From Euprymna scolopes (lineage: Eukaryota): a stretch of DNA of 64,000 nucleotides. Position numbers and translations under genes: made by a program. The notes below the pieces were generated by a model that ran no database searches, was not told where the DNA came from, and saw only the letters and a program-made list of their open reading frames with translations. How positions within the stretch are numbered: the first letter of the stretch is position 1; every line of letters begins with the position of its first letter. This document shows positions 3,770 to 46,080 of the stretch, in pieces. Location of the stretch: NCBI GenBank assembly GCA_053919585.1, contig CM132783.1; one strand, written 5' to 3'.

Positions 3770-6560
3770 AGTTGGCCTGCCAGCATGTAATATCTGATCT
3801 TCACACAGGAGACGAAAAGCCTAGCCTAACATCGCTTTCGTAACAATACTTAGACAGATGCTGCTTGGTGGGGCTTTTTGTGGCTGATCCGCATTTTCAA
3901 CATAGCACTGCTCACCCAAGAATTTGGAAGGGAACAAGAAAATGTATCCTTAATAAAGCTGCCTTTGCCTTGCTGGTCAGCAACGTGAAGCAGATGGCTG
4001 TCGATATTAACAGGGACAGAAGATATTATGCTAAAGTACACCCACTCCAGTTATGTTGTTGGAATGCGAGAAAATCTATTGGAATGGTAAAAGGCTAGAA
4101 CAGAAGACTGCAATTTTGACTAAGAAATTTCAAAGTTACAATATAGATATTGCTGCACTTTCTGAGACACGTTCGCAAGTGAGGATCAACTGATCCAGCG
4201 TGAGTCGGGCTACACGATCTTCTGGTCCGCTATATATGAAAATGAGAGGTGTGAGGCTGGTGTTGGCTTTACAGTTAAGAACTTAAATGACAAGATCGAA
4301 TAGCCATTGAGAACTTCCCTTGCTGCTGGTCGTTACATTAATGTTTTTTATATCCATGCGCCGACTCTTACTTAATCTCAAGACGATATTACTTCCTATT
4401 ATTATATGCTTAAATCTGTTATCATCGGTTTTCCAAGTGCCGAGATGTTGGTGGTTCTTGGTTACCTCAATGCATGGGTTGTATCAGACAATGAGACTTG
4501 GTCTCCATTAGGTCCATATGGCATTGGTAGAGCCAATTCAAATGGTCTGCTGCTCCTCCATCTTTCAGTGAGCTAAATCTTGTTATCACCAGCACTTTTC
4601 CACAAGAAAAACAAGTAGACCTGGTTCTATCTCCGGTCTAAACATTGTCATTTGTTTGATTACATACTGTGTAGAAGTGGTGATCTTGGAAATTTTTGCA
4701 AAGTTTTTTTGTTTAATTACATTTTAACGCCAAACAAGCACATTGCCACTTTGTTGCATGGGGATACTATCAGGGACATAGACATAAGTGGTACTGTGTA
4801 AGGAGTTTGGCAGCAAGATGTCGGTTCACGTTACACTTGAACATATGCATGTCAGTACAGTTGAGGAAGCAAGGACCCGGAAGGGAATTCCAAACACTAG
4901 CTGTCCTGGGGAAGAAACTACTGGAATAGAAGGTTTTCTTACATCTAGGGATCTCTACTTTGAAGGGGTTAGATTTAGCTGCTTGTCGGGTTCTGGGGGT
5001 ATTTAGGTCGAGGGGGCACAAGTGATTGCAGTTCGTAGGAGCATTCACCGTTAAAATGCTTGCAGAACAGGCTGAGGGATACAACATTTCGTCGATGGGA
5101 CAGAGGCTGAAGCTTAAATGACAGTTCAGAACCTATCAGATTGGCGACTCTCTTTTGAGCCTTGTCTAGGAGCAAGAGACAAGTGGCAGATGCACCAGCC
5201 CAAATATGACAAAAATACTCCATACATGGACGAATGGTGGCCTTATAGATGTATAGGATACTGTCGGGCGTAAGTAGCTTTCTAGCACGGTAGAGATAAC
5301 CTACCTTCTCCGCAGCGGTCCTGGTTTAAAAGTTGTACTTTCAGATAAAGTTTAAAAGATGTACTTTCAGATAAAGTCATTGGTCATTACAGTTCGAAAA
5401 AAAACCGTTCCAATGGAGTCAAAGTACCTAAGCGTATTAATGTTTCCAAATTGAAGGATCCAGTCGTACGAAGTTCCTGGAAATCTGCTTTCAACCAGGT
5501 GGATTTCTCATATTCTGATTGGGAGATATTAAGAGATACAATATACCAAAAAGGTTTTGAAGTTCTTGGATCGAAGGTTCCCAGACATTGAAATTGGTTT
5601 GCTGATAATTCCAATCAAATTAACCTTCAAATTGATAGAAAGCGAAAGCTTATTTGAAACTTCTTAACTCTTCACTTCTGAACAGATTTTTCTGTGCGGA
5701 GTGAGTTTCAGTGTTGTGTGCGCTAAATAAAAAAATGGTGGTCTGACCTCTCGAGGAATATACAGACTGTCTACGATCATAACGATGTCAAGACATTTTA
5801 CATGTTGCTTCATCAGGCTTATTGTCCGAAATCATCTTCAACTACACTACTCCTGGCGAAGGATTGGAAAACATTGCTGAAAACCTCAGATGAAATTATG
5901 CATCGATCGCATGAACACTCTCATGATCTTTTTCGCCGACCAGGCAATGTTAGGTTCCAGCAATAGAAAGCATCCCTCAATGTTCCTTTTGTCCGGAATT
6001 TGATACTGAACCGACTCTTGTGGAAACAGTTTACTACATTAAACAGATAAACTCGAACAAAGACCTTGGGCTGGATGCCATTCTCTTGAGCTGCTAAAAC
6101 ACAATGGTGTCAATGTACATTGTGTGGTGCACTCTTTGTTAATGTCAGTATGTCATGGTGACCCGGTTGCCCAAGATTGAGTAGATGCCATCCTGATTAT
6201 GCTGTACAAAGGAAAGGGTACAATGTCTGGTTGTGGTGATTATCAAGGTATCTCGCTGTTGACTGTGGTTGGAAATGTATTTACACGATTCTTGTTAAAC
6301 TGATTTGAAAGTATATATTTCCTGATATCCTTCCGGAATTCTAGTCTGGTTTAAAGGTGGGCGAGGAACCGTGTATATAGGCAGCTTCTGGAAAGTTTAT
6401 TGAGCAACGTATGCCTCTTTGCCATGTGTTTATGGACTTAACCAAGACATTTGACACAATCAACCGTGAATCTCTCTGTAAAGTGCTGGAAAAGTTGGTT
6501 GTACACCTGCTTTTACGAAAAAGCTCAAGCAACTTCATTCTAGTATGAAAAGTCGAATCA
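3770..6560 (+). mobile_element. RTE-clade LINE (APE endonuclease plus N-terminal RT), decayed, interrupted by a CR1-like insertion
   Basis: Plus-strand motifs YNIDIAALSETR, SGYTIFWS, GVGFTV, GPYGIGRANSNGLLLL, HLFDYIL, KVPKRINVSKLKDP, YQGISLLTVVG, FMDLTKTFDTINRESL. Confidence 0.9.
4703..5390 (-). mobile_element. CR1/L2-group LINE family A, 5'-truncated 3' fragment nested in the RTE
   Basis: MEYFCHIWAGASATCLLLLDKAQKRVANLIG and SSFFPRTASVWNSLP; 3' UTR shared with copies at 38028, 50567 and 61006. Confidence 0.92.
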
Positions 6561-6586
6561 ACTGTGGCGTCTGTCCTCAAAAAAAG

Positions 6587-7340
6587 TCAGGGAGTAAATG
6601 GTTTGCTGAGTACAATTTGCAGTTTCAGGCAAACCGACTGACAAGCATGTTAGCCTTCTCGGTTGTTGTGCAGACAACCTCATGATTGTTGAATCCTAGG
6701 AAATTGTTGATTGCCCAGTATTTACTACACTGTTGTAGATTTTCGATAAATTGCGGGTTCCTAATTGATGTTTTGTGATGCATTTTCTGGTGGTTTTTGG
6801 AACATTTTCTCTTAGATGCCGCTATTTCTTTATTACAAAGACTTTTAGCGGCATTTGTCTGTTTGGACTGGACTTATTTCAGATGAATCTGCAGTATACA
6901 TGCTGACTTTAAGCAATGGCAACTGCAAAAGTAGAAAACTATTGAGGATAGTGGGAATTCCTATAGAATTTCCGTGTGTGACCATGTGCTTCAGTTGCCG
7001 TTTTGAACCATTTAGTTATATAATTTGCGGATTTTCTACATGGCGAGAAAAGGTATTTCCCCATGGCGCATCTCTGATGATATCCTGAATGGCTTCCCAG
7101 TCAGTGTCTTCATAGTACTTTATCGTTTTGAGCAATAACTCTTCAATTGGGGGTCGAGAATTTAGGTCGATTTCTGTCATTATCACATCGTTGTCAGCAT
7201 CCCGAGTGAGCTACGGACATTCGTTACGCAATTATCGGGAACTATGGTCACAAATTGGCCTAGAAGTGAGACAGGTTTTTCTTGCTGATCTGGGAAACGT
7301 GTCAGAAACGTAACTGTGATTGGGAAGGAGATAGAGAGAA
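6587..7340 (-). mobile_element. CR1/L2-group LINE family A internal fragment (end of endonuclease and linker)
   Basis: Aligns by eye to 62690-63420 (GCAAGCATGTTAGCCTTCTCGGTT, GGCTTCCCAGTC, TTTTGAGCAAT). Confidence 0.85.
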
Positions 7341-9146: not shown

Positions 9147-9186
<40 letters not shown>

Positions 9187-9205
9187 GCACATATATAAAT
9201 ATACG

Positions 9206-9246
9206 GATCTTGGCCTTTTGGCCAAGATCAAAGTGTAGTAGCTGTT
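9206..9246 (+). pseudogene. U2: U2 snRNA 5' fragment (stem I and branch-point recognition sequence)
   Basis: TCTTGGCCTTTTGGCCAAGATCAAAGTGTAGTAGCTGTT versus U2 TCTCGGCCTTTTGGCTAAGATCA(A)AGTGTAGTATCTGTT; no Sm site or downstream U2 sequence. Confidence 0.85.
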
Positions 9247-9429
9247 ATTCAGATGCGGCACTTCCATTTCTCGTTCTCTTTCCGTGGAGGAGAAATCCTT
9301 CACGACTGAGACAATGTTTATTTATGTACCTTTTCTCCACGTTAAAAAACTATCCTGGTGTCTAACTCTGTCCCGTGGGGACGCATTGTAAATAGGTACA
9401 TATATAAATAGTTTTTAAATTATAATTTT

Positions 9430-9468
9430 CACTGACACATGTTTCGTCGACTACGACGCATCAGAATG
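9430..9468 (-). ncRNA. Minimal type I hammerhead motif, copy 1 (A9 to C change)
   Basis: Minus: CATT-CTGATGC-GTCG-TAGT-CGAC-GAAA-C-ATGT-GTC-AGTG; stem I CATT/AGTG, stem II GTCG/CGAC. Confidence 0.75.
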
Positions 9469-9742
9469 GCTGAATAGAGCGAGATTCAAATTCGAAACCC
9501 AATGGTAAGAAGACTTAACCTCTTTTACTGTGCTATCTTGTAACACTGCTGGATGGATCACGTTTTATGTAGATGTTTTTTTGTTTGTTTGTTTTTGTTT
9601 GCAATACTTTTTTTATTAATCCAATACCTTATACAACTGCGTTTTTACCTAAATGCCGGTTAGGAATAAGTTTCCCTTTGACCAATTCGGTACCAACTAA
9701 ATAGAAGATCGTCATATGTATTGCTTTTAAAATATAATTATC

Positions 9743-9780
9743 CACTGACACGTGTTTCGCTTTATACGACTCATCAGATG
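9743..9780 (-). ncRNA. Minimal type I hammerhead motif, copy 2 (intact core, weak stem II)
   Basis: Minus: CAT-CTGATGA-GTCGTATAAAGC-GAAA-C-ACGT-GTC-AGTG with palindromic stem III ACACGTGT. Confidence 0.8.
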
Positions 9781-9827
9781 TTCAGCCACTATTATTAGTG
9801 GTAGACGACGAAACCTGTGTCAGATAA
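9781..9827 (+). ncRNA. Inverted, decayed hammerhead copy 3
   Basis: TTCAGCCACTATTATTAGTGGTAGACGACGAAACCTGTGTCAG aligns without gaps to the copy 1 minus strand TTCAGCCATTCTGATGCGTCGTAGTCGACGAAACATGTGTCAG. Confidence 0.65.
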
Positions 9828-9829
9828 TA

Positions 9830-10850
9830 ATGTTATTGCAATGATGCCCTTGGGAGATCAGGATACAATGGATAAATTTAATATAATTGTACCAATAATA
9901 GTAAATACAACCCCAGCTGCGTAATCTTGTATAACATGGCAATGAGAGCTAGAAAAAATCAAAGATCAATAAGGGAAACGTTGAAAATTATCAAAAGGAT
10001 AGTAACGGTGGAGGAAATAATAACAGCAGAACTCGTAAGGATTAGAGTGGTGCCATTAATAAGAGAAATAGACGCGAGAGACAGGTTTAGTTCAATCCAC
10101 CATTCAGCGAGAATATCAAAAATAATATACTTAAGGAATTCTACAGAATAATAAACCAAAACAATAATAGGTCCCGATAATAAATTAAACAAAATGATAA
10201 ATAGAAACTCTGTAAAATTATCTTTCTCAACGTCCAGAAGCTTAACTAACACTATAATCAGCTCCAACAATAGAAAAATCAGCAAAATAAGAAAAAATAG
10301 CAAACTACTATGAAACGAAAGTATCATAAACAAAAAATGTAATTGCAGAATACCTTAAAAATGATTGATGGGAAATGTCTAACCTCGGAAATAGTGTATA
10401 AATGCGAGATAAAAATCGGCAACACTGAGAAGATATATCTGGGAGCCATGGGTACAGTTTTTAAGGACAGCTATAGAAACCACGTCGTATCATTTAAAAA
10501 TAAACCTGAAATAGAAACTAATAGGGATGGCGTAAACAATAGCAGGGGAGTGGGTACAAAAATCAGCATTAAAAATAAAAACAAAAAGAGGAATACAACT
10601 ACATTAGGTGATTGGGTTAGGGAACTTAACAGAAATACTGAAAATGTTGAATTAAAATGGTAAGGAGTGGACAGGGGGAGGAAGTACAGCCCCGGGAAAT
10701 CAAAAAAGTGCAATATATGTTTATTGGAAGCCTTCTACATAGTGAATTCCAACGAGGAAATTTTGAATAAAAGACTAAATGCCATACAGGGATGCCTACA
10801 CAGGAATAGAGTTCTGCTATCACACCTTAAATGTGACTGAGGTATAACTT
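9830..10850 (+). mobile_element. Penelope-like element 3' part (linker and GIY-YIG endonuclease), decayed; possibly Naiad-like
   Basis: FNPPFSENIK, KMINRNSVKLSFS, KCNCR, CLTSEIVYKCEI...KIYLG...FKDSYRNH (ORF 10343-10663), KCNICLLE...LNKR...CLHR. Confidence 0.88.
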
Positions 10851-10999
10851 TTTTCAACATTAAGGATCAACGGATGGGAGGATTAAATTTTAATGTACAG
10901 TTTAATAGCTCTAATATATAGCTAGTTTCTATTATACTAAACCTGGTAAGAAATATAAATAAAACATAAAGCTCATCTAAAAAAGAGAACTTTTCTCCA

Positions 11000-12000
11000 T
11001 AACGGTGAGCATCTTTGTATTCAGTTGTAGCAGTATTGACGGTCGAATAAGTGATACCACTCTTCAAATCAGGAAAACAACGTACAAGTAAACTAGTTTT
11101 TATTACAAATTAAATTAGCAAAATGGTGCCTGAAAATTAATTTAATTGATTTTGTCATCTGACATATTAAGTTGATAGTATCCACGCTCATTTACTTATT
11201 CTCTTACTTTACCCCGTATTCTAAATGTTTTACCCATAAATGCAGGAGTAGACATCTTCTCATCGGAGTAAAACACATTTGTAGCTATTGGGTGGTTTTG
11301 CGTCCAGAATAATAATTAGAGGATATATACTATCTTATTTAGATACCGAAGAATACAACACCAATTATAAGATATGAGAAGCATAAGTGATTAATAACAG
11401 ATGTGGGTAAAACCCATGGGTAAAAAACATTTTTTTAAGATTAAAAACATAACTTATATACTTAATTTGTTAAATAAGCTATCGTAGCACGTTCTGGGTC
11501 TGTCTCATTAAATTAATTATGAAATTATAGACGCCTTGTAGTAATCAATGTACCGAACACATCAAGTGACCTGAATTATCTCCCTTTAGCTGTTATAGGA
11601 AATAAAAATCAACCCAATTTTCTACAGAATTAACTAGTAGCAATTAACCACATAATTGGATTATCTCCCTTCATAATTGTCTTTAGAAAGGATATAGAAA
11701 CATATTTAAGTAGAATGACAATAAATTTTAAACATTAAATAATAATAAATAGATTAGAATACCTCACTCGAAACGTTATACAAGGATTTATATATAATAC
11801 AGCCTTTATATTTACTCTCATATTCAATTAAACTTCAAACTTAAAATGGTCCTATCTAAGTACTATAATAACGATAACCTGTAAACATTACTCGTCACTA
11901 ATACGAACCTAAAATTAACAATAACGTTATTGCAAAGTTGTTACGGCCATACCATAAATATAGAGATAAACATTTTAAAAATGTTTTTTTTTTAATTATT
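11000..12000 (-). mobile_element. Highly decayed Penelope-like RT remnant (tentative)
   Basis: Scattered minus-strand motifs KGDNPI, SLDV and PMG in the expected order; many stops. Confidence 0.35.
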
Positions 12001-12421
12001 TATAGGGAAATAAAGAAACAGTGAGATCTAATTTAGGAACTCAAAGAATGGGGTATATAACTTTTTTTTAATGGCTAAGGGTTTCTGTTAAAACTTCTCA
12101 TTACTCTGTTCTTAAATAAGGATACGAAAATTTGGCGATATATTAATATTTAAATGGGCTTTTCCATATCTACAACAGAGGTGCATGTTTCTCACATGCT
12201 TTTCCCGTGAAGGGAATTTTTTTTTCTTTTTCCTCAAAACATGCTCTATTGTTAAAAGTGTTTATTCATAAAGTCTTAAGAAATGCTGGTTTTGGAAAAT
12301 GTTCAAACGATATAATGTTTGAAATTATTCGACTGGGCATGGAGACAATTGTAACGTTAAATGAAATACACTTTTTGTTGCTATCAACACCCTTCTTGAA
12401 GTCTTTATTTTGCTTTCACGG

Positions 12422-12501
<80 letters not shown>

Positions 12502-15498: not shown

Positions 15499-15558
<60 letters not shown>

Positions 15559-15776
15559 CAATCTCTCACATTCTGAAAATCATCATAAGTTGCTCGCTTG
15601 GTAAGCATTGCTGGATGGCATTGTCCTTAAAAACTCCTACTTGTGAGACATCGGCTTGGGGTTATTGGCTGGTTGGATGACCGCGTCCCTTGTTGAGACG
15701 AAGTAGGTTCATTTCACAGTCGGATTTCGACGCGGTTTGCTTGATCTGTGTTGGTTAATAGAAATTCTTGTGTGCA

Positions 15777-15848
15777 GGGCGTTTGCTCAATTGGTAGAGT
15801 GCTTGCCTTGAATGCAAGAGGCTCGGGTTTCGAATCCTGAGTTCGGAT
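15777..15848 (+). pseudogene. tRNA-derived head (Ala-like scaffold; anticodon loop reads TGA; acceptor stem unpaired)
   Basis: A box TGCTCAATTGGTAGAG, D stem GCTC/GAGT, anticodon stem CTTGC/GCAAG around CTTGAAT, B box GGTTTCGAATCC within CTCGG/CTGAG. Confidence 0.8.
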
Positions 15849-15850
15849 GT

Positions 15851-15895
15851 GTCTAATTGATGAACCCAAATGAGGGCGAAAGTCGAGTCTTGGAC
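15851..15895 (+). ncRNA. Type I hammerhead motif fused to the tRNA head
   Basis: GTCTAA-TTGATGA-ACCC-AAATGA-GGGC-GAAA-G-TCGA-GTC-TTGGAC: 6-bp stem I, CCC/GGG stem II, TCGA palindromic loop; C3 to U and C15.2 to G changes. Confidence 0.75.
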
Positions 15896-15954
15896 TTCCG
15901 GTTCTTTGACTGTAATGGCTCTTGTGGGCTGTGACGTTGTTTGGCTGTGGAATT

Positions 15955-16011
<57 letters not shown>

Positions 16012-16555
16012 GGATTCGATACCTTACAGTATTAATTGCCTTGTGTTGTTGTTTTTTTCTGTTGCTTTCACTTGCAACTGGGTAATACTCATATTTATGT
16101 GATTCAGTTGTATCATTCGAGGATTTTCATGAGAAGCTGGAATTTTGCCGCTAATGTTTACTGTAGAGCCTCAGTCATCTCAATTGCAATAAGTAATAAA
16201 GGTCATAGTCAACTAGTATCAAAGCAATTAACTATTGTTATAACGCAAATCATTGAAAAGAATCGTCGCAATTTTTGAAGCCTTGTAGCATATCCGAGAA
16301 CATAAGTTTCCAGGAACATCACTGGTAAATATCATTGATGATGACCTATGAGGACTCCGCGTAAGTCTCNNNNNNNNNNNNNNNNNNNNNNNNNNNNNNN
16401 NNNNNNNNNNNNNNNNNNNNNNNNNNNNNNNNNNNNNNNNNNNNNNNNNNNNNNNNNNNNNNNNNNNNNNNNNNNNNNNNNNNNNNNNNNNNNNNNNNNN
16501 NNNNNNNNNNNNNNNNNNNNNNNNNNNNNNNNNNNNNNNNNNNNNNNNNNNNNNN

Positions 16556-18972: not shown

Positions 18973-18973
<1 letters not shown>

Positions 18974-19030
18974 AGCAAACAGTTAATAAAACATGTTAAA
19001 AAACATTTTGAAAAAGAGTTAAGAACATTT
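18973..19030. mobile_element. Truncated copy of the ~100-bp MITE at 41024
   Basis: GAGCAAACAGTTAATAAAACATGTTAAAAAACATTTTGAAAAAGAGTTAAGAACA matches the reverse complement of the right half of 41024-41125. Confidence 0.75.
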
Positions 19031-20485
19031 TTTTACAAGGCGGTCACCACTTATCAAGGTCCAGAAGCCACTCAGGGATAAGGTTTATTGTAAGTACAGT
19101 ACGTTAGTGTGGATATTTAAAGTGTCTACTTAAAAGGAAGGTTCATCAGGTTTTTGTTTACGTTGGACTTGAAGACATCCAAGTTGTAGTAAGTGGGAAA
19201 CAGACAGGCGGAACAGAGTTCCACAGGCGTGCAATTCTAAGAAAGAAGCTTTGTTCATGGAATCCACGTTTTGATTTAGGCATAGATAAAGAGTGGAGAA
19301 AGTTTTTGACAGTGGATTCAGCTAGAAGGGCGTTTTTTGTGAAAGATTAGTGGGCGGGGACCAGAGATTGGAGTTCAGACGAGCACCTGCCACGGAAATA
19401 TCGATAAAACAAAGATAGACTTTAAACGTCTCTTCTGTGGGAGAGAGGTTGCAGGAAAGAGAAAAGGGCATCCCCCACTAAGCCACGAAGTCTATTTTGT
19501 ACTCTGTCAAGGCAGGATAGGTTGTTTTTAGCTGCTCCTGCCCAAATATGGCAGCAGTACTCCATCCGTGGACGTACTTGGCTTTTACATAGATAGAGAA
19601 TTGCATCAGTAGTGAGATATCTTCTGGAGCGGTAGAAGGATCCCACCATCTTTCCAGCGACCTTGACAAAAGTACGTGTTCCATTTCAGATCAGGAGTAA
19701 AGGTCAAGCCCAGAAGCTTGTCAAAACATGGGGCTTCTGCTAGACGAGAGCCATCCATTTCAATTGATGTCAGATGGGGATTCGACCGTTGATGATGTAA
19801 AGATAGGAGTTTGGTTTTAGATGCATTAAAGGTAACCAGCCACGTTTCCCCAACTCAACCACTCGTTCGAGATCAGAGAAGAAAGAATCAGAGAGAGCTT
19901 TGTCATTTACAGCCTTTTATGTGTTGCCGTAGATGGTCGTGTCATCAGCATAGATGTCAACGAATTATTTAAGTATGTGTTTAGGGAGGTCATTGATACA
20001 GATCAGGAAGAGAGTTGGCCCCAGGATTGACCCTTGTGGGGATCCAGCATTAATACTACATCCCTCTGATTTTTGTCCATCAACCACTACTCTTATGAGC
20101 CTATCAGAGAGAAATGATTTAATGATAGAGAGAATATTTCCATGTTATACCGTAGCTGGAGATCTTGTGCAGTAGGCCCTTATGCCATACCTTGTCGAAG
20201 GCCTTTGATATTTCAAGAGCAATTGCCCTGGAAAGGAAGGCTTTGTCAAGAGATTCACAAATCCTATGGTATATAACCGTTAGTACATCTGCGGTAGATC
20301 TAGCAGAACGGAAACCATATTGCGTGTCACTAAGAAGGTTGTTTCTGCTGAGGTGGTTAACAATTTCTCTGTTTAATATGGATTCCAGCAACTTACTCAT
20401 GACACACAGGAGACTTATTGGTCTTTACTGAGAAGGAGATGACTTATCACCTGAGTTCTTAAATACAGGACATACTGATGAGGTT
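19030..20485 (-). mobile_element. CR1/L2-group LINE family B, 5'-truncated (RT to 3' end)
   Basis: QYGFRSARSTADVL, ALEISKAFDKVWHKGLL, PQGSILGP, IYADDTT, MEYCCHIWAGAAKNNLSCLDRVQNR. Confidence 0.95.
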
Positions 20486-25140: not shown

Positions 25141-25691
25141 TCATTATATACAGCATTTGTTAAACAAATATTTTTTGGCATTATATCAACATATTTCATC
25201 CCCTATATCAATTACATTAAAATATTCTGTTCCCCACGCAGTAAAAGACTAAAATAAACTGAAAACAATGTCATTTCTAATAATAGATAAGAGTAAGTTT
25301 AGTTCACCGATGATCTCCCTAGATAAATAGATAACTATTACAGTTTTTGCAAATTTCTCTACGGAGTAAATCTGAAGGTGTAAACTTTTCATAGTGTTTA
25401 TTAGCATCATGGAATATATTCGCGAATTTGAGAAAAAGTGAAAATTATTTTGAATTTAGACCTGGCATATACAGCTCTTTTGATTGTGCTAGACGAGCAT
25501 TATAAAAATATATGAAAAATAACTCATTAATAGTTCAATAGAATTTATCAAGTTATATTTTCTATGAAATAATGCCTTCTATGCTAGCAAGACTTGATTT
25601 TTCAATGGATTATAAAAAATTTGATGTGTAAAAATCAACAAAGGAACATAAATATATTTCTTATTTCAAATTAAGTAATACTGAGTGTAGA

Positions 25692-25875
25692 TTCCATTCC
25701 AGGTCCCTGCTTCCCCAACTGTAGGGACGTGCAGAAGTTCAAGTGTAACGTGAAGAGACACCTTTCTGCCCAAATCCTTGCATAGTACCCCAGTTGATGT
25801 TACCCTTGATAGTAGCCCCCTACACCAAAGTGGCAATGTGTCTTGTTTGGGGTGAAAATGTAATTTAACAATTTT
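25692..25875 (+). mobile_element. CR1/L2-group LINE family A, very short 3' end
   Basis: SIPGPCFPNCRDVQKFKCNVKRHL plus 3' UTR AGCCCCCTACACCAAAGTGGCAATGTG...GGGGTGAAAATGTAA. Confidence 0.9.
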
Positions 25876-26104
25876 TTAAAAAAAACTACATTGGACTTGG
25901 CGCNNNNNNNNNNNNNNNNNNNNNNNNNNNNNNNNNNNNNNNNNNNNNNNNNNNNNNNNNNNNNNNNNNNNNNNNNNNNNNNNNNNNNNNNNNNNNNNNN
26001 NNNNNNNNNNNNNNNNNNNNNNNNNNNNNNNTTAAGGTAACAAATGAGATATGCAGAAAGGCATTAGATTGTATTATTAAATATATTCTCGGTTATATGT
26101 ATAC

Positions 26105-27740: not shown

Positions 27741-28630
27741 CTAGCATTTCAGCCCGGCGTTGCCCGGGTGTTTGGATGTGTATGTTGAGAAAAAAAAGGT
27801 GTAGTAGGAAGGCAAGCTTGAACCCGTACCGCAAAGGCGGAAAAGAACGGGGTAAAACCTAACGTTTATGCTGTTACGACCACCGACAAACCGCAAGCGA
27901 ATTTTTTTTTTAAATTAAGGCTAGACAATTTAAACGAGAGGATAACTTTCAAAAATATCGGCGAAAAAAGTGCCGCCCCTATAGAAAAGTGCATAGTTGA
28001 AGGGGAAGATATTAATGTTTTAGCCAATTTTTCGATATTTGTCGTCTGAAAGGTCGAATTTTAAAACGCTACTGATCTGGATAAATTCCGTCGGCTCTAT
28101 TGAAAGTATAAGGCAGATATGCAAACATACATACATATACACATACATACATACATTTATATATTATTACCAAAAAATTTCGACCCAAACTGATGAAAAA
28201 GCTTGCCCTATCTCTGAATAGCCTTTATGTAAAATTTCAAATATTTAGACCAGGAATTGTCTGAGTAATTTGGAAGAGACCGCAGAGGTCATTTTTTTTT
28301 AAATATTAACCCCTATTATGACCCCTTAAAATTTATTGTTTAGGGCTCCAATCAGGTTATTAAGTTAAATCCATGTCCAAGGAACCTATATCTTAAATTT
28401 CAAATGCGTACACCCAAAATTGTCGGAGTTTAGTAGAGTTCTCAAAGGTAAAATCGTTGAACTTTTCCCCCTTAATCGCCAAATTTCTGGCTAAAACCCG
28501 ATCATATCGATTCCCCCAAATCTCGGTACCCTGTATATCAAATTTCGAGTCTGTAGACTAAAAATTGGTAGAGTTATTGCGTAGGGAAATGTACACAGAC
28601 GCACACACACACACGTACACTTTTATATAT
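27741..28630 (-). mobile_element. Non-autonomous Helitron, family H1 copy 1
   Basis: Minus 3' end CCCGGGCAACGCCGGG hairpin then CTAG|T; 5' end TATATATAAAA plus GT repeats; colinear with 45196-46080. Confidence 0.85.
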
Positions 28631-31600
28631 ATATATATATATGTCTGTGTGTGTTTGTGTGTGTGCGTGTGCGTGTGTGTGTGTATATATATATAATGCC
28701 TATGTTACCTTTACATAGTGTAAAAAATTTGCTACCGGAATTGATTATACTGCTGATAATATTTGTATGGAAGCTGCCATTCGCTTTCAGAAGTCGACGT
28801 GTTTTATCAGAGACGATGACTTGTACGTAGCAGCAAAGTTCTCACACGTATGCAAATAAAAGTGACGTCACAGCGAACGAGAGAAGAGGGCAGAAAAGTG
28901 AAGAGAAAAATAGGAACCTCATGAGCGGAGAGAGCGTCTTGGAAGCTCGTTTGATTGTGAGAGGAACTTTTAAAACAAGATGCAATTCGAACTTGTAAGC
29001 TATTCAGAAAACTGTGCGCCGTGAGGTGAGCTGCGGCATAGCGGAGGAGTTAAAAGGCGAGTTTAAAAATTATCAGCGTGAAAGCAGTTGGATTTGAGCA
29101 GATGTGTTGACGAAGTTTTTTGTCTGCATTTACATGTAACGAACGGATTAGAGTGGATTCTGTTGCTACGACCAGTACCATTGGAAAGTCGTTGTGATCT
29201 ACATAATATATTACGCACTTTTAAATGAAAATAAAAATGAAAGAGTATATCAAAGTAAAATGATCTATAGTTTAATACTGTATTACCTTAAACGTACATA
29301 CGTACGTGTGTCAGGGTTTCCAGATTAAAAATTATTCTATCGAGTAATTTTATTTATTACAAAGGAGGATGAAAGGTGATAATACACAACTAGCATCTAA
29401 TTAGTATATAAAGACGCTAATAAAAGATTCATAGTATGTTTTCAAATGTATCTTCTTTTTTAATAAATAGGATTGCTGGATCACAGGAGACGTAATTAAA
29501 ATAATAATCATAACATTCTGTCGCTTTTTGATCGTATGCGAAATTAAAATGTACATTCTTGGTTTTCTGGCTAGGATCTAGTGTAGTATCTGTACTGTCT
29601 AACAGTGGTATAATTGATATAGTGGTATTGTCCTTTGCGCTGGGCGGCAATACAATACAAAATATGTAAAAAATTATTATTATAAGGATATTGAGGAGAA
29701 ACCAGATTAGTTATACAGATACATTTACAGTTTAAACAAAAAAGGGCCACAATAATATCGTGGGGTCTCCAGTCACGTTTAACGTCCACAAAATGCCCAA
29801 CAGCAATAAATTACATATGAAGATGCCACTGTGAAATTGCCACAGGTTTCCCTAGTCTATGTAATAACACCCTAGTACCCTTGATGTACGTAGTTTCTGT
29901 ATCACTACCTGCAGATTATAAATTATTCGATCAGTAAGTCCTATTAATTTAAATAATTTAAAAAGAGGAACATGTGATAACATTCTACTAACATCATATA
30001 ACACTTATTTAATATTCGTAGTACATTATCATCTTCTATTCTTCTTTTTTAAGGAATTGGATAATAATGTCTTTTTGAGCGGTACGTGAAACTAAAGTAT
30101 ACTTTCTTTTTCTTCTAGATAGGATCAAGAATAGTATCTTTTCTAAATAAAGACAGTATAACGATATCGTGGGATTTCTGATCGCGCCGTCTGTCAATAC
30201 AATGGAAATATGTCACAATATAAATGAAATGAATATCCCATGCGTTTTGAATCTTCAGGCTGGCTGTGAGAATTACTTATTAAGCCTTAAAAGTGGTTAT
30301 ATTTTGAGTAAAATAACATGTATATTCTCGAAATTGTTTGTTGCATACGTGTGAAATATAAACATTTTCTTNNNNNNNNNNNNNNNNNNNNNNNNNNNNN
30401 NNNNNNNNNNNNNNNNNNNNNNNNNNNNNNNNNNNNNNNNNNNNNNNNNNNNNNNNNNNNNNNNNNNNNNNNNNNNNNNNNNNNNNNNNNNNNNNNNNNN
30501 NNNNNNNNNGTCAACATTTCAAAACCAGAAGATTTATTCGTCACTCGTAATATATTTTTATATATTTTTTTATGAAATCCGCCTTACACTTATTTCGTTG
30601 AATATGATAAGCCCGTTAAAGGACTTATTAGAAACATGAATATATTTCTTTAAAAATAGTTGGAAATACTTTTCCTGCTAATGCTCAAAGATAAAGAAAG
30701 AAACATTAAGTTTGATAGAAGGAAATAGATATATTTAAAGTTGGCAGACATATAATAAATAAATAAATAAATACTACATTATTCCACTCATGTCAAAGAA
30801 AAGCCATTTAATTTTACCTACGCGTATTGCACCATTATTGGCAAGTTATAAAGTCATATTACGAAACTTTGTACTAACGTCTAACGGTAATGGCTGAAGA
30901 ATGAAACTAAAAGCGTTTTTGATGAAATTTTATTTTATTGCAATGATTTATAATACATGCAATTTACACGACAACTGATTTTTAATGGTGGCCTGTCAGC
31001 ATCACCGGTTTATGCTTCACACATCATTCATTCAGTATGTAACTGCAATTTTCCTTTATCTAATGTCACCTTGACCGAAAGTAGTCAGTATGCACTCAGA
31101 TAGATAGTTTTAATTTCATTCAATTAAAAAATCCACTGAAATTACTCTATAAATGGTTCTAATTTCGCACAATAACGAATAATGTTTAAGATGAAGTTAT
31201 TGAAATAGAAATTGCTCTATTAGGATAATGGGTGAGAAAAATGGAGGCAACATGGTCCGAGTCTATTCTCATAAAACGCCGGATACGCCTTTCAGTCATG
31301 AAGAAATATTTTGTATATTTTACTATTCTTTAAGAATCTACTTATTTTAAACACTTTTTTGTTATTTAACTGTTGTGCGCATATTCAACGGAAATATCAT
31401 TTAATTAGTGCCATATTCTACCGGTTCACTTTCGTTGGCAATAATTATGTGGGTTATTGTGCTGAGGATTTGATGAGCTGAATCAGCCACAAACTCTATA
31501 CGCTTGGAATACTAAATAAAACACGATGAAAAGGGACAAAACGAGAAGTAATTATTATTGACTGCCAGAAAATAACACAGATCCGTGACGCCATAAAATA

Positions 31601-36299: not shown

Positions 36300-38020
36300 A
36301 TAACCAGGTTTCGTTCCTCACTCAACAGGGATAAATCGAGGAAAATACGATTTTAAAAAAGTCATGAATATGGCGGGGAGAGAAAAATAAAAGCGAAAAA
36401 TAAACGGGAGAAAAATTACATAGAGACTAAATTAAGTCCTAATAGATTTTCTTTTTGCTTGCAAAGAGAAGGTCTCAAAGACTTAATAAAAATAGTCTCT
36501 AGAATTTTTAAACGAAAGGGCGAGTGCGACATACTCAAGATCGTAAACATTTCAGCACTAAAATTTGTGGCCCACGCATGGTTATTTATAAGTTGGTCGC
36601 AAATCACATAACCATAGTATCATTCAGAACATCCAAGGGTGAAAAATTTGCATAACGAATCCTTGATGGTACATGTTGTTTCAAACGAACATCTAAACCT
36701 TGGATGTTCAACCAGAATAGCACGCACTGCACTTACATTTAAATAAATAAATAATAGAATTAGTATAGTGAGGGGGAAGAACATTTTTGCAAATGGATGA
36801 CAACATAGATCTGGTTTAAAAAACAACACGTGGATTCGATGAAAAATAACACCGTTGCATAGACAAAGTGATTTAATTAGCAAAACGATCGCTGATATTA
36901 CCGAGACAAGGTAGACGTATATAAACATGACATCCATTAACTATGATTTCTTTAGGTTTATAAAAATTTGAAACTTCTTTATTAATAGTAGTTTCAACAA
37001 TATTTAAGGAGAAACCATTGTTACAAAGGGTTTTAGTAATAAATTAAAGCTCGTCATTAAGATTAACTTTAGAACAAATCATTAAGGCCTTATGTGCTAA
37101 AGTCTTAATTAAATTGTACTTCTGGTTAGTAGGACAAAAATAGTCCCAACGCGTATAGAGACCGGTAAATGTTGGTTTACGATAAACAGAAGTAAGAAAA
37201 CACAAGGATTCCTTGGACACAAGAACATCCAAAAAGGTAAGAGTAGAATTCGTTTGCTTGTCTACTTAAGGGATGGATGGACGTTATTGAGGGACACAAA
37301 AAAAGCATCCGCATTCGTCTCGTCAAATAAGCAAAAAGGGTCATCAACGTAACGAAAATAAATGTCTGGTTTATGCAATATAATATACCTGTTCATGAAA
37401 TCCTCCAAAAATTTTAGCCAAGGCTGATCCCAATAGGTGGCGAATTTCATCAATTCTACAAAAACTTATTTCTGGAATTGAGGGAGTTGGAAGTTTACTA
37501 CGATAAAAGGCGTCATCACAAATGTTAATATTCTCTAACAATGGATGCAAGTAAAAAGACTAGTAATATCAAAAGAACAAATAAATTTGTCGGAATAAGT
37601 ATAAATTTGTCGGAATAAGTATAAATTTGTCGGAATAAGTATAAATTTGTATAAAGTTAGTAAGGCTAAAAGAGTCTTTAATGCAAAAAAAAACTATAAT
37701 TTTCAAAACGGGTTCTAAAATACTTGTCATTCATTTAGCTTACTTATGTTGAGAGAGCCCTATCATAGATAATATATGTCTCAACGGTACCCTCCTTTTT
37801 ATTGGTCTTAGGCGAACCATTCAGACGGAGGCGTTGGGTCGAATTAAATTGGAAATGCAAGTTGGTAGAACACCACTTTTAACCCATTTGACAATTCGTT
37901 TCTGAAACTTGGTCTCGATAGAGATCGTAGAATCATCAGTATCTACCGGACCTAAATTAAATTTAGAAATGCCCTCCAGGATAGTCATCATTTTACTGAC
38001 ATAATCCTGGTAATCCATTT
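36300..38020 (-). mobile_element. Penelope-like element (RT and GIY-YIG), decayed, cut by a LINE at 38028
   Basis: MDYQDYVSKM, CSFDITSLF, YFRYVDD, FLDVLV, SVYRKPTFTGLY, IIYLFKCKCSACYSG, LKILETIFIKSLRPSLCKQKE. Confidence 0.93.
37581..37650. repeat. 20-bp tandem repeat x3.5 inside the PLE RT
   Basis: ATAAATTTGTCGGAATAAGT repeated perfectly. Confidence 0.95.
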
Positions 38021-38027
38021 TATTGAC

Positions 38028-39090
38028 ATTTTTTTTATTACATTTTCACCCCAAACAAGGCAAATTGCCACTTTGGTGTAGGGGGCTACTATCAGGGGCA
38101 ACAACTACTGGGATACTATGTAGGGATTTGGGCAGCAAGATGTCGGTTCACGTTACACTTGAACTTCTGCACGTCAGAACTGTCGGGGAAGCAGGGACCT
38201 GGAATGGAATTCCAGAGTCTAGCGGTTCTGGAGAAGAAACTATTGGAGTAAAAATATATTTTACATCTAGGGATCTCTACAGTGTGGGGGGCATTTAGCA
38301 GCCTGTCGGATTTGTCGATGGTGCTCACGTCGTGGGGGCACAAGTTTCTGCAGTTCGCCAGAGCGTTCACCATTAAAATACTTGTAGAAAAGGCAGAGGG
38401 ATACAACATTTCGTCGATGGGACAGAGGCTGAAGCTTAGATGCCAGTCAAGGGCCTATCAGGTTTGCGACTCTCTTTTGAACCTTGTCAAGGAGCGAGAG
38501 ACTAGTAGCATATGCACCAGCCCAGATGTGACAGCAATACTCCATACATGGGCGAATCGTGGCCTTATAGAGGTACAGGATACTTTCGGGTGTTAGTAAT
38601 TTTCTAGCACGGTAGAGAGAGCCCGCCTTTCCTGCAGCGGCCCTGGCAATGCCTTTAATGTAATTGTTCCAACTCATGTTTCCTGTGAACGTTAGGCCAA
38701 GGAGTTTGGAAGATGTACTCTCAGATAAAGAGTTGTTGGTCATTGCTATAGGTGGTAGAGAGGGTTTCTTGTAATTATTGAATGAAACTAGTTTAGTCTT
38801 GCCGGCATTGAACGTGACCAACTATTTTTGTCCCCATTCCACCACAGATTGGAGGTCTTCCTCTAGTGTTTCTGCCATTTCTTTAGAAATGTGTTCATTT
38901 GTATTCCTGTCGTGCCTGCCATAGAGTGTAGTGGCATCAGCATATATACACATCTCAGAGGCAATTTTGTCGGGGAGGTCATTTATGAATATCAGGAACA
39001 ATAGAGGTCCAAGGATAGAACCCTGGGGCACCCCCGCATTTATATCATTTTGTTTAGATGTACGACCGTCGAGGACAACCTGGATGTCTG
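38028..39090 (-). mobile_element. CR1/L2-group LINE family A, 5'-truncated
   Basis: PQGSILGPLLFLIFINDLP, IYADATT, MEYCCHIWAGA (ORFs 38447-38821 and 38822-39031), family 3' UTR. Confidence 0.95.
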
Positions 39091-39117
39091 TACGTATATA
39101 TATGTATATATATATAG

Positions 39118-41023: not shown

Positions 41024-41118
41024 ATATGAGCAAACAGTTAATGAAAGTTAATAAAACAAGTTTAAATATGTTTTTAACTCATTTCAAAGTGTTTTTAACA
41101 TATTTTATTAACTGTTTG

Positions 41119-41125
<7 letters not shown>
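41024..41125. mobile_element. About 100-bp MITE with 19-bp perfect inverted ends
   Basis: ATATGAGCAAACAGTTAAT (41024-41042) and ATTAACTGTTTGCTCATAT (41107-41125). Confidence 0.85.
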
Positions 41126-45196: not shown

Positions 45197-46080
45197 TGGC
45201 ATTTTAGCCCGGCGTTGCCCGGGTGCTTGGATGTGTATGTTGAGTGAAAAAAAAAAACGTAGTAGTAGGAAGGCAGGCTCGAACCCGTACCGCGAAGAAG
45301 GAACAGAACGGGGGAAAACCCTGACGTTTTTGCGATTACGACCACCGTCAAATCGGAAGTGACGCAGGTTTAAATTAAGGCTAGACAATCGAAAGAAGAG
45401 GATGATTTGAAAAAATATCGGCAAAAAAAACGGACACACCTGTAGAAAACTGCCTAGTTGAAGGTGAAGATATTAATGTTTTTAGACAATTTTTCGATAT
45501 TTGTCGTCTGAAAGGTCGAACTTAAATTCGGTACTGATCTTGGTAAAATCCATCCCCTCTGTCGAAAGTTTTCGGCAAACATGCAAACATACATACATAC
45601 ATACATACACTTATATATTGCTAACTAAAGATTTTCGACGAAAACAAATTAAAAAGCTTGCCCTATCTTTGAATACCCTTTATGCAAAATTTCAAATGTT
45701 TACACCAGAAATTGTCTGAGTAATTTGGTAGAGATCGCAGAGGTCAATTTTTTAAACTTTGGCCACTGTTATGACTCCTGAACAGTTATTTTTTTGCTCA
45801 AATCAAGTGAGTTAGGTGCATGTCCAAGGAAACCATATCGAACATTTCAATTGTTTATACCCAAAGTTAGCGGAGGCGTAAGGTAGAATTCTCAAAGGTT
45901 TAATCGTTGAACTTTCACTCCTTAACAGAAAAATTTCTGGCCGAAAAAGGATTAAAAAGATTTTCTCAAATCTCAGTACCCTGTATATCAAATTTCGAGT
46001 CTGTAGACTTAAAATTGACAGAGTTATTGTGTAGGTAAATGTCACACAGACACACAGACAGACACGTTTAATTATATATA
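45196..46080 (-). mobile_element. Non-autonomous Helitron, family H1 copy 2
   Basis: Same CCCGGCGTTGCCCGGG hairpin (terminal CTAG changed to CCAG); colinear with 27741-28630 including the (CATA)n block. Confidence 0.85.

What the first reader, a model, noticed from the sequence alone, without database searches (positions are those of the whole stretch)
15560..15957. tRNA head fused directly to a hammerhead ribozyme, embedded in (TA)n: candidate Pol III ribozyme-SINE/retrozyme family
Seen: a tRNA-like sequence with A and B boxes and intact D, anticodon and T arms (15777-15848) is followed within a few nt by a complete type I HHR fold (15851-15895, 6-bp stem I, palindromic TCGA loop), and the ~400-bp unit is bounded on both sides by (TA)n. 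Known: minimal type I HHRs with palindromic stem III mark Penelope-like pLTRs and retrozymes, and Schistosoma Sm-alpha combines Pol III boxes with an HHR. Inference: this is a non-autonomous, Pol III-transcribed, self-processing element mobilised by a PLE. The tRNA is internal, with about 210 nt of element-like sequence upstream, which fits a permuted or tandem retrozyme-type monomer better than a classical SINE. This copy has two core changes and may be inactive.
Basis: partly seen in the sequence, partly recalled or inferred. Interest (0 to 1): 0.85.

Follow-up and report, generated by a model that had tools for sequence, protein, structure and literature searches.

The report
Decayed tRNA-headed hammerhead retroelement copy
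This is a single, mutated copy of a short non-coding jumping element that joins a tRNA-gene-like promoter piece to a self-cutting hammerhead RNA and sits inside a TA repeat; the design is already known from blood-fluke Sm-alpha elements and animal "retrozymes", so it is a new example of a known kind.

Summary
Rfam finds a tRNA-like core at 15785-15840 (33.7 bits, above gathering; no acceptor stem) and, 10 nt downstream on the same strand, a full-length type I hammerhead at 15851-15895 (32.0 bits, 2 below gathering). These are the only tRNA hit and the only strong hammerhead hit in 64 kb. (TA)30 and (TA)25 bracket a 399-bp unit whose GC is uniform (46%) against 22-29% flanks, so the whole unit is one insert. 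The ribozyme has U at C3, A at 10.1 and a G.G mismatch in helix III. The A and B boxes each carry an inserted base. There is only one unit, so this copy is almost certainly dead.

Best reading: a solo copy of a tRNA-headed, hammerhead-bearing, non-autonomous retroelement (Sm-alpha-like SINE / non-LTR retrozyme), docked in a (TA)n microsatellite as Penelope-like elements do. Pol III read-through is supported only indirectly: no T4 run on the sense strand, P = 0.02.

I could not retrieve any same-family copy, so copy number, consensus and module linkage remain untested here. This scan has already noted similar ~400-410-nt tRNA-Ala + hammerhead units elsewhere in this genome (untested notes). Verdict: new member of a known kind, modest interest.

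The parts
15500..15558 (.). Left (TA)n tract, about 30 units. Read as the left half of the target microsatellite split by the insertion.
   Evidence: TRF. In the analogous element in L004, (TA)n lies at both outer ends but not at the internal unit junction.
15559..15776 (+). Left body of the unit, 218 nt, GC 0.445. It has no recognisable motif and no similarity to anything else in the window or the fetched loci.
   Evidence: Its composition matches the rest of the unit and not the 22-29% GC flanks.
15777..15850 (+). tRNA-derived module holding D, anticodon and T arms only. A-box-like at 15783-15794 and B-box-like at 15826-15837, each with a one-base insertion. Anticodon loop CUUGAAU at 15807-15813. 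No acceptor stem.
   Evidence: Rfam RF00005, 33.7 bits, at 15785-15840. ARAGORN finds nothing.
15851..15895 (+). Type I hammerhead ribozyme, degenerate. Stem I is 15851-15856 with 15890-15895. The core reads UUGAUGA at 15857-15863 (U at C3). Stem II is 15864-15877 (A.C at 10.1/11.1). GAAA is at 15878-15881. Helix III is minimal and palindromic at 15881-15888, with a G.G mismatch. The predicted cleavage is after C 15889.
   Evidence: Rfam RF00163, 32.0 bits (gathering 34), full model, with the alignment shown. Window-wide E = 5e-4.
15896..15957 (+). Right body of the unit, 62 nt, GC 0.45. It ends in the A/T-rich GGAATTTAT, directly against the right (TA)n.
   Evidence: It has no homology to the LINE 3' ends in the window or loci.
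15958..16008 (.). Right (TA)n tract, 25.5 units. Read as the right half of the target microsatellite.
   Evidence: TRF.
16052..16058 (+). The first run of four or more T downstream of the tRNA-like head (T7). This is the first place a Pol III transcript from this copy could terminate. The unit itself has none.

Best explanation
The 399 bp at 15559-15957 is one solitary, mutated unit of a non-coding, non-autonomous retroelement. The element combines a tRNA-derived internal Pol III promoter module with a type I hammerhead ribozyme placed 10 nt downstream.

Inferred life cycle of active relatives:
1. In tandem copies, Pol III starts at a tRNA-like head and reads through the terminator-free units.
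2. Each hammerhead, probably acting as a dimer through its palindromic helix III, cuts after its GUC. This releases unit-length RNAs that begin just after the ribozyme and end with the tRNA module plus ribozyme.
3. These RNAs, linear or ligated into circles, are copied by the reverse transcriptase and GIY-YIG endonuclease of a Penelope-like element into nicked (TA)n microsatellites.

This particular copy has one unit, one ribozyme with three damaging substitutions, and damaged A and B boxes, so it is a dead relic.

Shown: the two motifs, their adjacency, the (TA)n bracketing, the foreign composition of the whole unit, the sense-strand lack of T4 runs and the moderate sense-strand RNA structure.

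Inferred: Pol III transcription, self-cleavage in the family, PLE mobilisation and family membership.
For: - Motifs and adjacency.
- (TA)n on both sides: with a chance probability of 0.012.
- Uniform 45-51% GC across all four parts of the unit, against 22-29% around it.
- No T4 run on the + strand despite 34% T (P = 0.021), while the - strand has two.
- The + strand RNA folds with z = -2.0 to -2.2 and 63-68% paired, against z = -0.55 for the - strand.
- Related DNA (L004 shares LINE families at about 80% identity) holds a 351-bp hammerhead unit. It is present in 1.32 copies, has a perfect GUC/CUGAUGA/CGAAAC core, and its units are 100% identical. It is docked in (TA)n, with no (TA)n at the internal junction.
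- A PLE-type GIY-YIG remnant (Atlas score 0.94) and PLE-style minimal hammerheads lie 5-6 kb upstream, in a segment that is itself bracketed by (TA)n.
- Literature: Sm-alpha is a tRNA-Gln-derived SINE with a hammerhead (PMC2770079, PMC4918200). Mussels carry 350-390-bp retrozymes (PMC7229834). Naiad/Neptune PLEs prefer (TA)n (PMC8557442). [quoted passage not shown]
Against: - I found no second copy. None in the window, none in about 120 kb of related contigs, none in the viral or metagenome collections, and none through three spurious-ORF baits.
- The hammerhead scores below Rfam's gathering threshold and lacks C3 and G10.1.
- The A and B boxes are imperfect.
- There is a single unit and no tandem repeat, so the defining retrozyme arrangement is absent here.
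- RNA self-pairing (63-68%) is below the more than 70% reported for retrozymes.
- The T4 avoidance is significant only at the 2% level.
- The element has no sequence similarity to the PLE fragment in the window.
Confidence: 0.68

Rival explanations
1. It is a classical LINE-dependent tRNA-SINE that merely carries a hammerhead. The (TA)n would be the element's own simple-repeat tail, and an earlier (TA)n-tailed element would lie upstream.
For: A tRNA-derived module with A/B-box spacing like a tRNA gene. Many invertebrate SINEs end in simple repeats. An earlier scan note on this genome called (TA)n a tail (s1-288415). LINEs are abundant in the window.
Against: The tRNA module is 218 nt inside the compositionally uniform insert, not at its 5' end. 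There is no similarity between the element's 3' part and any LINE 3' end in the window or loci, and the main LINE family ends in an A-rich tail rather than (TA)n. In the L004 analogue, (TA)n is at the outer ends only.
Confidence: 0.15
2. It is a stray monomer of a satellite (tandem) DNA that spreads by unequal crossing-over or segmental duplication rather than through RNA. The tRNA and hammerhead motifs would be inherited passengers.
For: Hammerhead repeats were first described as satellite DNA (PMC7761336). tRNA-derived satellites exist in related assemblies, such as the 172-bp array in L006.
Against: A single unit precisely bracketed by a split microsatellite is what insertion produces, not array decay. 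There are no partial neighbouring units.
Confidence: 0.07
3. It is a chance juxtaposition: a decayed tRNA pseudogene next to a sequence that only resembles a hammerhead.
For: The hammerhead is below the gathering score, and both motifs are imperfect.
Against: Window-wide E-values are 3e-3 and 5e-4 for the only two such hits. They lie 10 nt apart on the same strand, inside one compositional island between two (TA)n tracts. The joint probability is far below 1e-3.
Confidence: 0.04
4. It is a domesticated non-coding RNA gene: a tRNA-like Pol III transcript whose 3' end is made by ribozyme cleavage and which is used by the host.
For: Promoter-proximal cleavage would yield a defined RNA of about 120 nt consisting of the tRNA-like module plus the ribozyme. 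The sense strand has no terminator.
Against: The core substitutions and damaged boxes argue against purifying selection on this copy. Its context is repeat-rich and AT-rich, with no conservation evidence.
Confidence: 0.03

Closest known systems
Schistosoma Sm-alpha / Sj-alpha SINE-like elements
   Same: A tRNA-derived Pol III-box module and a type I hammerhead within one short (about 330-400 nt) non-coding repeat. The helix III is minimal and palindromic, as in the Rfam Hammerhead_1 consensus, and the stem II loop is similar and A-rich (PMC2770079, PMC4918200).
   Different: The host phylum differs: this genome is apparently a mollusc, but that rests on one Atlas cluster and earlier scan notes. 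The parent tRNA also differs. Sm-alpha derives from tRNA-Gln-TTG, whereas here the anticodon loop reads UGA and the arms look Ala-like (from my recollection, untested). There is no demonstrated sequence homology, so the resemblance is in design and not in descent. This copy is single and degenerate.
Metazoan non-LTR retrozymes (e.g. the 350-390-bp repeats of Mytilus galloprovincialis)
   Same: A type I hammerhead in a non-coding unit of about 400 nt with less than 50% GC. It has no LTR, PBS or PPT, the sense RNA is structured, and PLE-dependent mobilisation is presumed (PMC7229834, PMC7761336, bioRxiv 10.64898/2026.07.22.740005).
   Different: Published retrozymes outside Schistosoma are reported without any tRNA or promoter motif (PMC4918200, PMC7761336). 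They are defined by tandem copies, whereas this is a solo unit. Self-pairing here is 63-68%, against more than 70% reported.
Penelope-like element pLTR hammerheads
   Same: A minimal helix III with a palindromic loop, implying dimeric cleavage, and association with (TA)n insertion sites (PMC8557442, PMC7761336). Examples are present in this same window at about 9431-9779.
   Different: No RT or GIY-YIG ORF is attached. There is no sequence similarity to the PLE fragment in the window. It carries a tRNA module, which PLE pLTRs are not reported to have.
Classical tRNA-derived SINEs of molluscs
   Same: A tRNA-related module with A and B boxes, short and non-coding (PMC11481361, PMC4824008).
   Different: The head is internal rather than 5'-terminal. 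No LINE-derived tail was found. A ribozyme sits directly behind the head, which would sever the promoter head from the 3' end in a single-unit transcript.

Membership tests
Hammerhead ribozyme type I (Rfam RF00163) | Score at or above the curated gathering threshold | tested here: not met
   32.0 bits against 34. It matches the full-length model 1-45, with window-wide E = 5e-4.
Hammerhead ribozyme type I (Rfam RF00163) | Three-helix junction in type I order (stem I open, stems II and III closed), with H17 before stem I 3' | tested here: met
   Shown by the alignment: 6-bp stem I, stem II hairpin, minimal palindromic helix III, and GUC at 15887-15889.
Hammerhead ribozyme type I (Rfam RF00163) | Invariant catalytic core (C3 U4 G5 A6 N7 G8 A9 ... 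G12 A13 A14, G10.1-C11.1) | tested here: not met
   U at C3 (15857) and A at 10.1 (15864). The rest of the core is intact.
Hammerhead ribozyme type I (Rfam RF00163) | Self-cleavage activity | not testable with these tools
   This needs in vitro transcription of monomer and dimer constructs.
Sm-alpha-like tRNA-headed hammerhead SINE | tRNA-derived Pol III box module and hammerhead linked in one short non-coding unit | tested here: met
   The modules lie 10 nt apart on the same strand, inside one 399-bp compositional unit.
Sm-alpha-like tRNA-headed hammerhead SINE | High copy number, with the two modules linked in other copies | not testable with these tools
   No other copy is reachable. Only untested scan notes speak to this.
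Sm-alpha-like tRNA-headed hammerhead SINE | Descent from the Sm-alpha lineage (tRNA-Gln-TTG head) | tested here: not met
   The anticodon loop is CUUGAAU (UGA), not TTG, and the host phylum apparently differs. The resemblance is in design only.
Metazoan non-LTR retrozyme | Hammerheads in tandem repeats of 170-400 nt, so that two cuts release a monomer | tested here: not met
   There is a single unit and a single hammerhead, with no internal repeat. A related-DNA analogue (L004) does meet this feature.
Metazoan non-LTR retrozyme | Low GC (<50%), with no LTR, PBS, PPT or ORF | tested here: met
   GC is 0.46. The only ORFs are short and spurious.
Metazoan non-LTR retrozyme | Highly self-paired, stable monomer RNA (>70% paired) | tested here: inconclusive
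   The + strand is 63-68% paired with z about -2.1. The - strand is 47-49% paired with z = -0.55.
Metazoan non-LTR retrozyme | Expression as linear and circular RNA | not testable with these tools
   No transcriptome data are available.
Classical tRNA-derived SINE | tRNA-related head at the 5' end of the element | tested here: not met
   The head begins 218 nt inside the insert.
Classical tRNA-derived SINE | 3' tail shared with a partner LINE | tested here: inconclusive
   There is no similarity to any LINE 3' end in 64 kb plus about 120 kb, but that sample is tiny.
Penelope-like element (pLTR) | Hammerhead-bearing repeats flanking an RT plus GIY-YIG ORF | tested here: not met
   No such ORF adjoins the unit. 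The nearest GIY-YIG remnant is 4.7 kb away and unrelated in sequence.

The most novel reading that the evidence does not exclude
Molluscs may have built Pol III-driven retrozymes independently of flatworms and possibly several times. In this reading a tRNA-derived internal promoter sits immediately upstream of a hammerhead inside a terminator-free unit. The element would then supply its own constitutive transcription, cut itself to unit length, and borrow only the PLE reverse transcriptase and endonuclease for insertion into (TA)n. This would answer the open question of which polymerase and promoter drive the very high retrozyme circRNA levels in invertebrates.
Probability: 0.3. Interest if true: 0.6.

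Novelty: new member of a known kind. Interest (0 to 1): 0.3.

Why it matters
Published work on animal retrozymes states that no conserved motif reveals how they are transcribed or mobilised, with Schistosoma's tRNA as the only exception. A tRNA-headed hammerhead element in a second phylum, docked in (TA)n like PLEs, would suggest two things. The first is that the promoter-plus-ribozyme design is a recurrent solution. The second is that Pol III may drive some retrozymes. This particular copy is a dead relic and cannot settle the matter. Its value is as one more data point, and better-preserved copies reportedly exist elsewhere in the genome.

Tried and rejected
1. Other copies in the window. 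Sensitive blastn found only the self-hit.

2. Exact-pattern scans. The hammerhead stem II pattern and the anticodon-arm pattern each found nothing in viral contigs. The metagenome scan gave one hit, L001, which is an unrelated HH9-like hammerhead sharing only stem II.

3. A 'spurious ORF' back door, searching with translations of ORFs that cross the element:
- The 51-aa minus-strand ORF found nothing in the word-indexed search.
- The same ORF in the exhaustive HMMER search found only generic tRNA-derived tandem repeats, L005 and L006, with no hammerhead.
- The 63-aa (TA)n-initiated ORF found nothing.

4. About 120 kb of contigs sharing LINE families with the window (L002-L004, L007, L008). None holds a same-family copy.

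5. The tRNA-likeness of the stretch upstream of the L004 hammerhead. It is not confirmed by Rfam or ARAGORN, and its B-box-like motif is one base short. I do not count L004 as a second tRNA-headed element.

6. LINE-tail borrowing: no similarity found.

7. Pfam on the neighbouring ORFs, including the GIY-YIG-like one: no hit. Only the Atlas features place that ORF with GIY-YIG proteins.

8. The Ferbeyre 1998 paper on Sm-alpha is not held, so Sm-alpha anatomy is cited second-hand from PMC2770079 and PMC4918200.

Full report
**What is there**

Rfam at curated thresholds finds exactly one RNA family hit in the 64-kb window. It is a tRNA hit at 15785-15840 (+), scoring 33.7 bits against a gathering score of 29, and it covers the D, anticodon and T arms only. 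ARAGORN calls no tRNA. Direct reading shows that no acceptor stem can form between 15777-15783 and 15841-15848, so this is a tRNA-derived module and not a gene. The D loop and the T loop each carry a one-base insertion relative to the model. As a result the A-box-like sequence (15783-15794) and the B-box-like sequence (GGTTTCGAATCC, 15826-15837) are both imperfect.

With permissive filters, Hammerhead_1 matches 15851-15895 (+) over its whole length. The score is 32.0 bits, 2 bits under the gathering score, with E = 5e-6 locally and 5e-4 for the whole window. The fold has these parts:
- A 6-bp stem I (GUCUAA/UUGGAC).
- A core reading UUGAUGA.
- A stem II with an A.C pair at 10.1/11.1 and a hexaloop AAAUGA.
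- GAAA.
- A minimal helix III around the palindrome UCGA, with a G.G mismatch.
- GUC, with the cut predicted between 15889 and 15890.

This copy therefore differs from a canonical hammerhead at C3, at 10.1 and at one helix III pair.

**More than chance**

In the whole window at E up to 10 there is one tRNA hit and one hammerhead above 21 bits. They lie 10 nt apart on the same strand. Tandem Repeats Finder confirms (TA)30 at 15500-15558 and (TA)25.5 at 15958-16008. The window has 19 (TA)>=10 tracts. A random 120-bp feature has such tracts within 300 nt on both sides with probability 0.012.

**Extent of the element**

All four parts of the 399 bp between the tracts have similar GC: 0.445 for the left 218 nt, 0.51 for the tRNA module, 0.47 for the hammerhead and 0.45 for the right 62 nt. 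The surrounding 2-kb bins are at 0.22-0.29.

The sense strand has no run of four or more T although it is 34% T. Only 2.1% of shuffles achieve that, and the antisense strand has two such runs. The first T run downstream is T7 at 16052-16058.

The sense RNA folds better than dinucleotide shuffles, with z = -2.0 linear and -2.2 circular and 63-68% paired. The antisense RNA does not (z = -0.55). These are modest, strand-specific signs of a transcribed, structured RNA without Pol III terminators.

**Search for relatives**

I could not retrieve a second copy of this family:
- Sensitive blastn finds none in the window.
- Two family-specific patterns find nothing in viral contigs.
- The one metagenome hit (L001) is an unrelated hammerhead, HH9-like, GC-richer and without a tRNA. 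It shares only stem II.
- Some public assemblies were gene-called with prokaryote-style callers, so I used ORFs crossing the element as baits. The 51-aa antisense ORF found nothing in the word-indexed search. The exhaustive HMMER search returned only long 'proteins' that are translations of generic tRNA-derived tandem repeats without hammerheads (L005, L006). A 63-aa ORF starting in (TA)n also found nothing.
- Contigs that share the window's LINE families at about 80-85% identity hold no same-family copy in about 120 kb. That identity is the same range as between copies within the window.

**An informative analogue**

One of those related contigs, L004, carries a different hammerhead element at 6080-6541. 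Its features are:
- A 351-bp unit present in 1.32 copies.
- A perfect GUC / CUGAUGA / CGAAAC core. Rfam aligns it to the type III model at 26.3 bits, below the gathering score.
- The two units are 100% identical over the 73 nt by which the second unit extends.
- The array is docked between TA-rich tracts, with no (TA)n at the internal unit junction.

This shows that hammerhead tandem units exist in this or a closely related genome. It also shows that (TA)n is their target and not their tail, and that adjacent units can arise from one template in one event, as the rolling-circle retrozyme model predicts. The stretch upstream of that hammerhead looks tRNA-like by eye. However, neither Rfam nor ARAGORN supports that, and its B-box-like motif is one base short. 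I do not count it as a second tRNA-headed element. A further minimal hammerhead-like motif with a palindromic helix III abuts the next (TA)n in L004.

**Candidate partner**

Within the window, about 5 kb upstream, an interrupted ORF at 10343-10840 (+) has GIY-YIG-like motifs. The Atlas places it with a cluster named 'GIY-YIG catalytic domain-containing protein', whose one member with a known phylum is a mollusc (score 0.94, 182 shared features). Pfam does not recognise it. PLE-style minimal hammerheads are readable on the minus strand at about 9431-9470 and 9741-9779, the latter at 20.5 bits. This PLE-like segment is itself bracketed by (TA)n at 9152-9181 and 12440-12466. It has no sequence similarity to the element. 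It shows only that PLEs with hammerheads and (TA)n docking populate this genome.

The two LINE families in the window do not share their 3' ends with the element, and the main one ends in an A-rich tail.

**Literature**

- Sm-alpha of Schistosoma mansoni is a SINE-like element derived from tRNA-Gln-TTG that bears a hammerhead (PMC2770079).
- The metazoan retrozyme paper describes 350-390-bp hammerhead repeats in the mussel, abundant circRNAs and co-existing PLEs. It does not mention Pol III or tRNA heads (PMC7229834).
- The 2020 review says the repeats show no motif that reveals the partner (PMC7761336).
- Craig et al. report a strong (TA)n insertion bias for Naiad PLEs that obscures TSDs (PMC8557442).
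- A 2026 preprint argues that vertebrate non-LTR retrozymes derive from PLE pLTRs. It also does not mention tRNA (bioRxiv 10.64898/2026.07.22.740005).

My searches found no published tRNA-headed hammerhead element outside Schistosoma.

**Mechanism**

The best-supported reading is a solo relic of a tRNA-headed, hammerhead-bearing, non-autonomous retroelement. In active, tandem relatives the tRNA-derived boxes would recruit Pol III, which would run through the terminator-free units. The hammerheads would cut after GUC, probably as dimers through the palindromic helix III, as reported for PLE and amphibian motifs (PMC7761336). The unit-length RNA would then run from the base after the cut, through the right body, the unit junction and the left body, to the tRNA module and ribozyme.

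That arrangement explains why the tRNA is 'internal' in a genomic unit. It also explains why a ribozyme directly behind a promoter head is not self-defeating. The RNA, linear or ligated, would be copied by a PLE into a nicked (TA)n tract. The A/U-rich right end (GGAAUUUAU) could anneal there. All of this paragraph is inference.

The copy in the window has one unit, one ribozyme lacking C3 and G10.1, and damaged boxes. It can neither release a monomer nor, probably, cleave.

**Earlier scan notes**

Notes on other pieces of this genome describe 'about 400-nt', 'about 409-nt' and 'about 410-nt' units with an internal tRNA-Ala head fused to a hammerhead (s1-275101, s1-295558, s1-268947). Follow-ups on other families reached the verdict 'new member of the Sm-alpha/retrozyme kind' in a large mollusc genome. 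These fit my 399-bp unit and my own untested impression that the arms resemble tRNA-Ala(UGC). They are unchecked, I could not see those sequences, and I do not count them as evidence.

**Verdict**

The element is a new member of a known kind. This copy is a dead relic of modest interest, and the interesting question has to be asked of intact copies: whether Pol III-driven retrozymes exist in molluscs.

Noticed in passing
window 9201-9334, 29551-29707, 30099-30241 (+): Three sub-threshold U2 snRNA-like fragments (39, 32.7 and 20.8 bits, against gathering 46). The first has an intact U2 5' end fused to non-U2 sequence and starts right after a TA-rich tract. This may be a U2-derived repeat family.
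   Followed up: no
window 9431-9470 and 9741-9779 (-), 10343-10840 (+): PLE-style minimal hammerheads, the second reading CUGAUGA...CGAAAC-ACGUGU-C at 20.5 bits. Next to them is an interrupted GIY-YIG-like ORF (Atlas 0.94, no Pfam hit). The whole 9182-12439 segment is bracketed by (TA)n tracts. No RT-like coding remains.
   Followed up: partly
window 18973-19032 and 41064-41121: A 60-nt sequence, 88% identical between the two sites and in opposite orientations, abuts a (TA)n tract at both places. This is another element type with a fixed end docked at (TA)n.
   Followed up: no
window 28200-28573 and 45655-46023: Two arrays of three units of about 150 bp each belong to one repeat family (61-77% identity). 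No known RNA motif was found in them.
   Followed up: no
window 4706-5350, 38018-39100, 50562-51900, 61007-62360 (-), 25691-25883 (+); 19127-20485 and 57162-59219 (-): Two LINE families. One has an A-rich tail and at least five 3' fragments. The other has an RVT_1 domain and matches an Exo_endo_phos_2 + RVT_1 element in L003. No N-masked stretch was filled or inferred.
   Followed up: partly
L004 6080-6541: A 351-bp hammerhead unit in 1.32 copies, with a perfect catalytic core and units 100% identical where they overlap. It is docked in (TA)n. This is an apparently young retrozyme-like insertion in DNA related to this genome (ENA ERZ22157276).
   Followed up: partly
L004 6694-6892 and about 6565-6628 (-): A foldback element (long inverted repeat) sits exactly between (TA)32 and (TA)37. 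Next to it is a minimal hammerhead-like motif (CUGACGA...GAAAC plus the palindrome GAAUAUUC). (TA)n tracts look like general landing pads for several element types.
   Followed up: no
L006 8325-10329; L005 10001-31687: L006 has a 172-bp tRNA-derived tandem repeat in 11.7 copies, without a hammerhead. L005 has an annotated 2077-aa 'protein' in GCA_030867185.1 with 25 stretches matching a translated tRNA-like bait. It is likely a mis-annotated repeat array.
   Followed up: no
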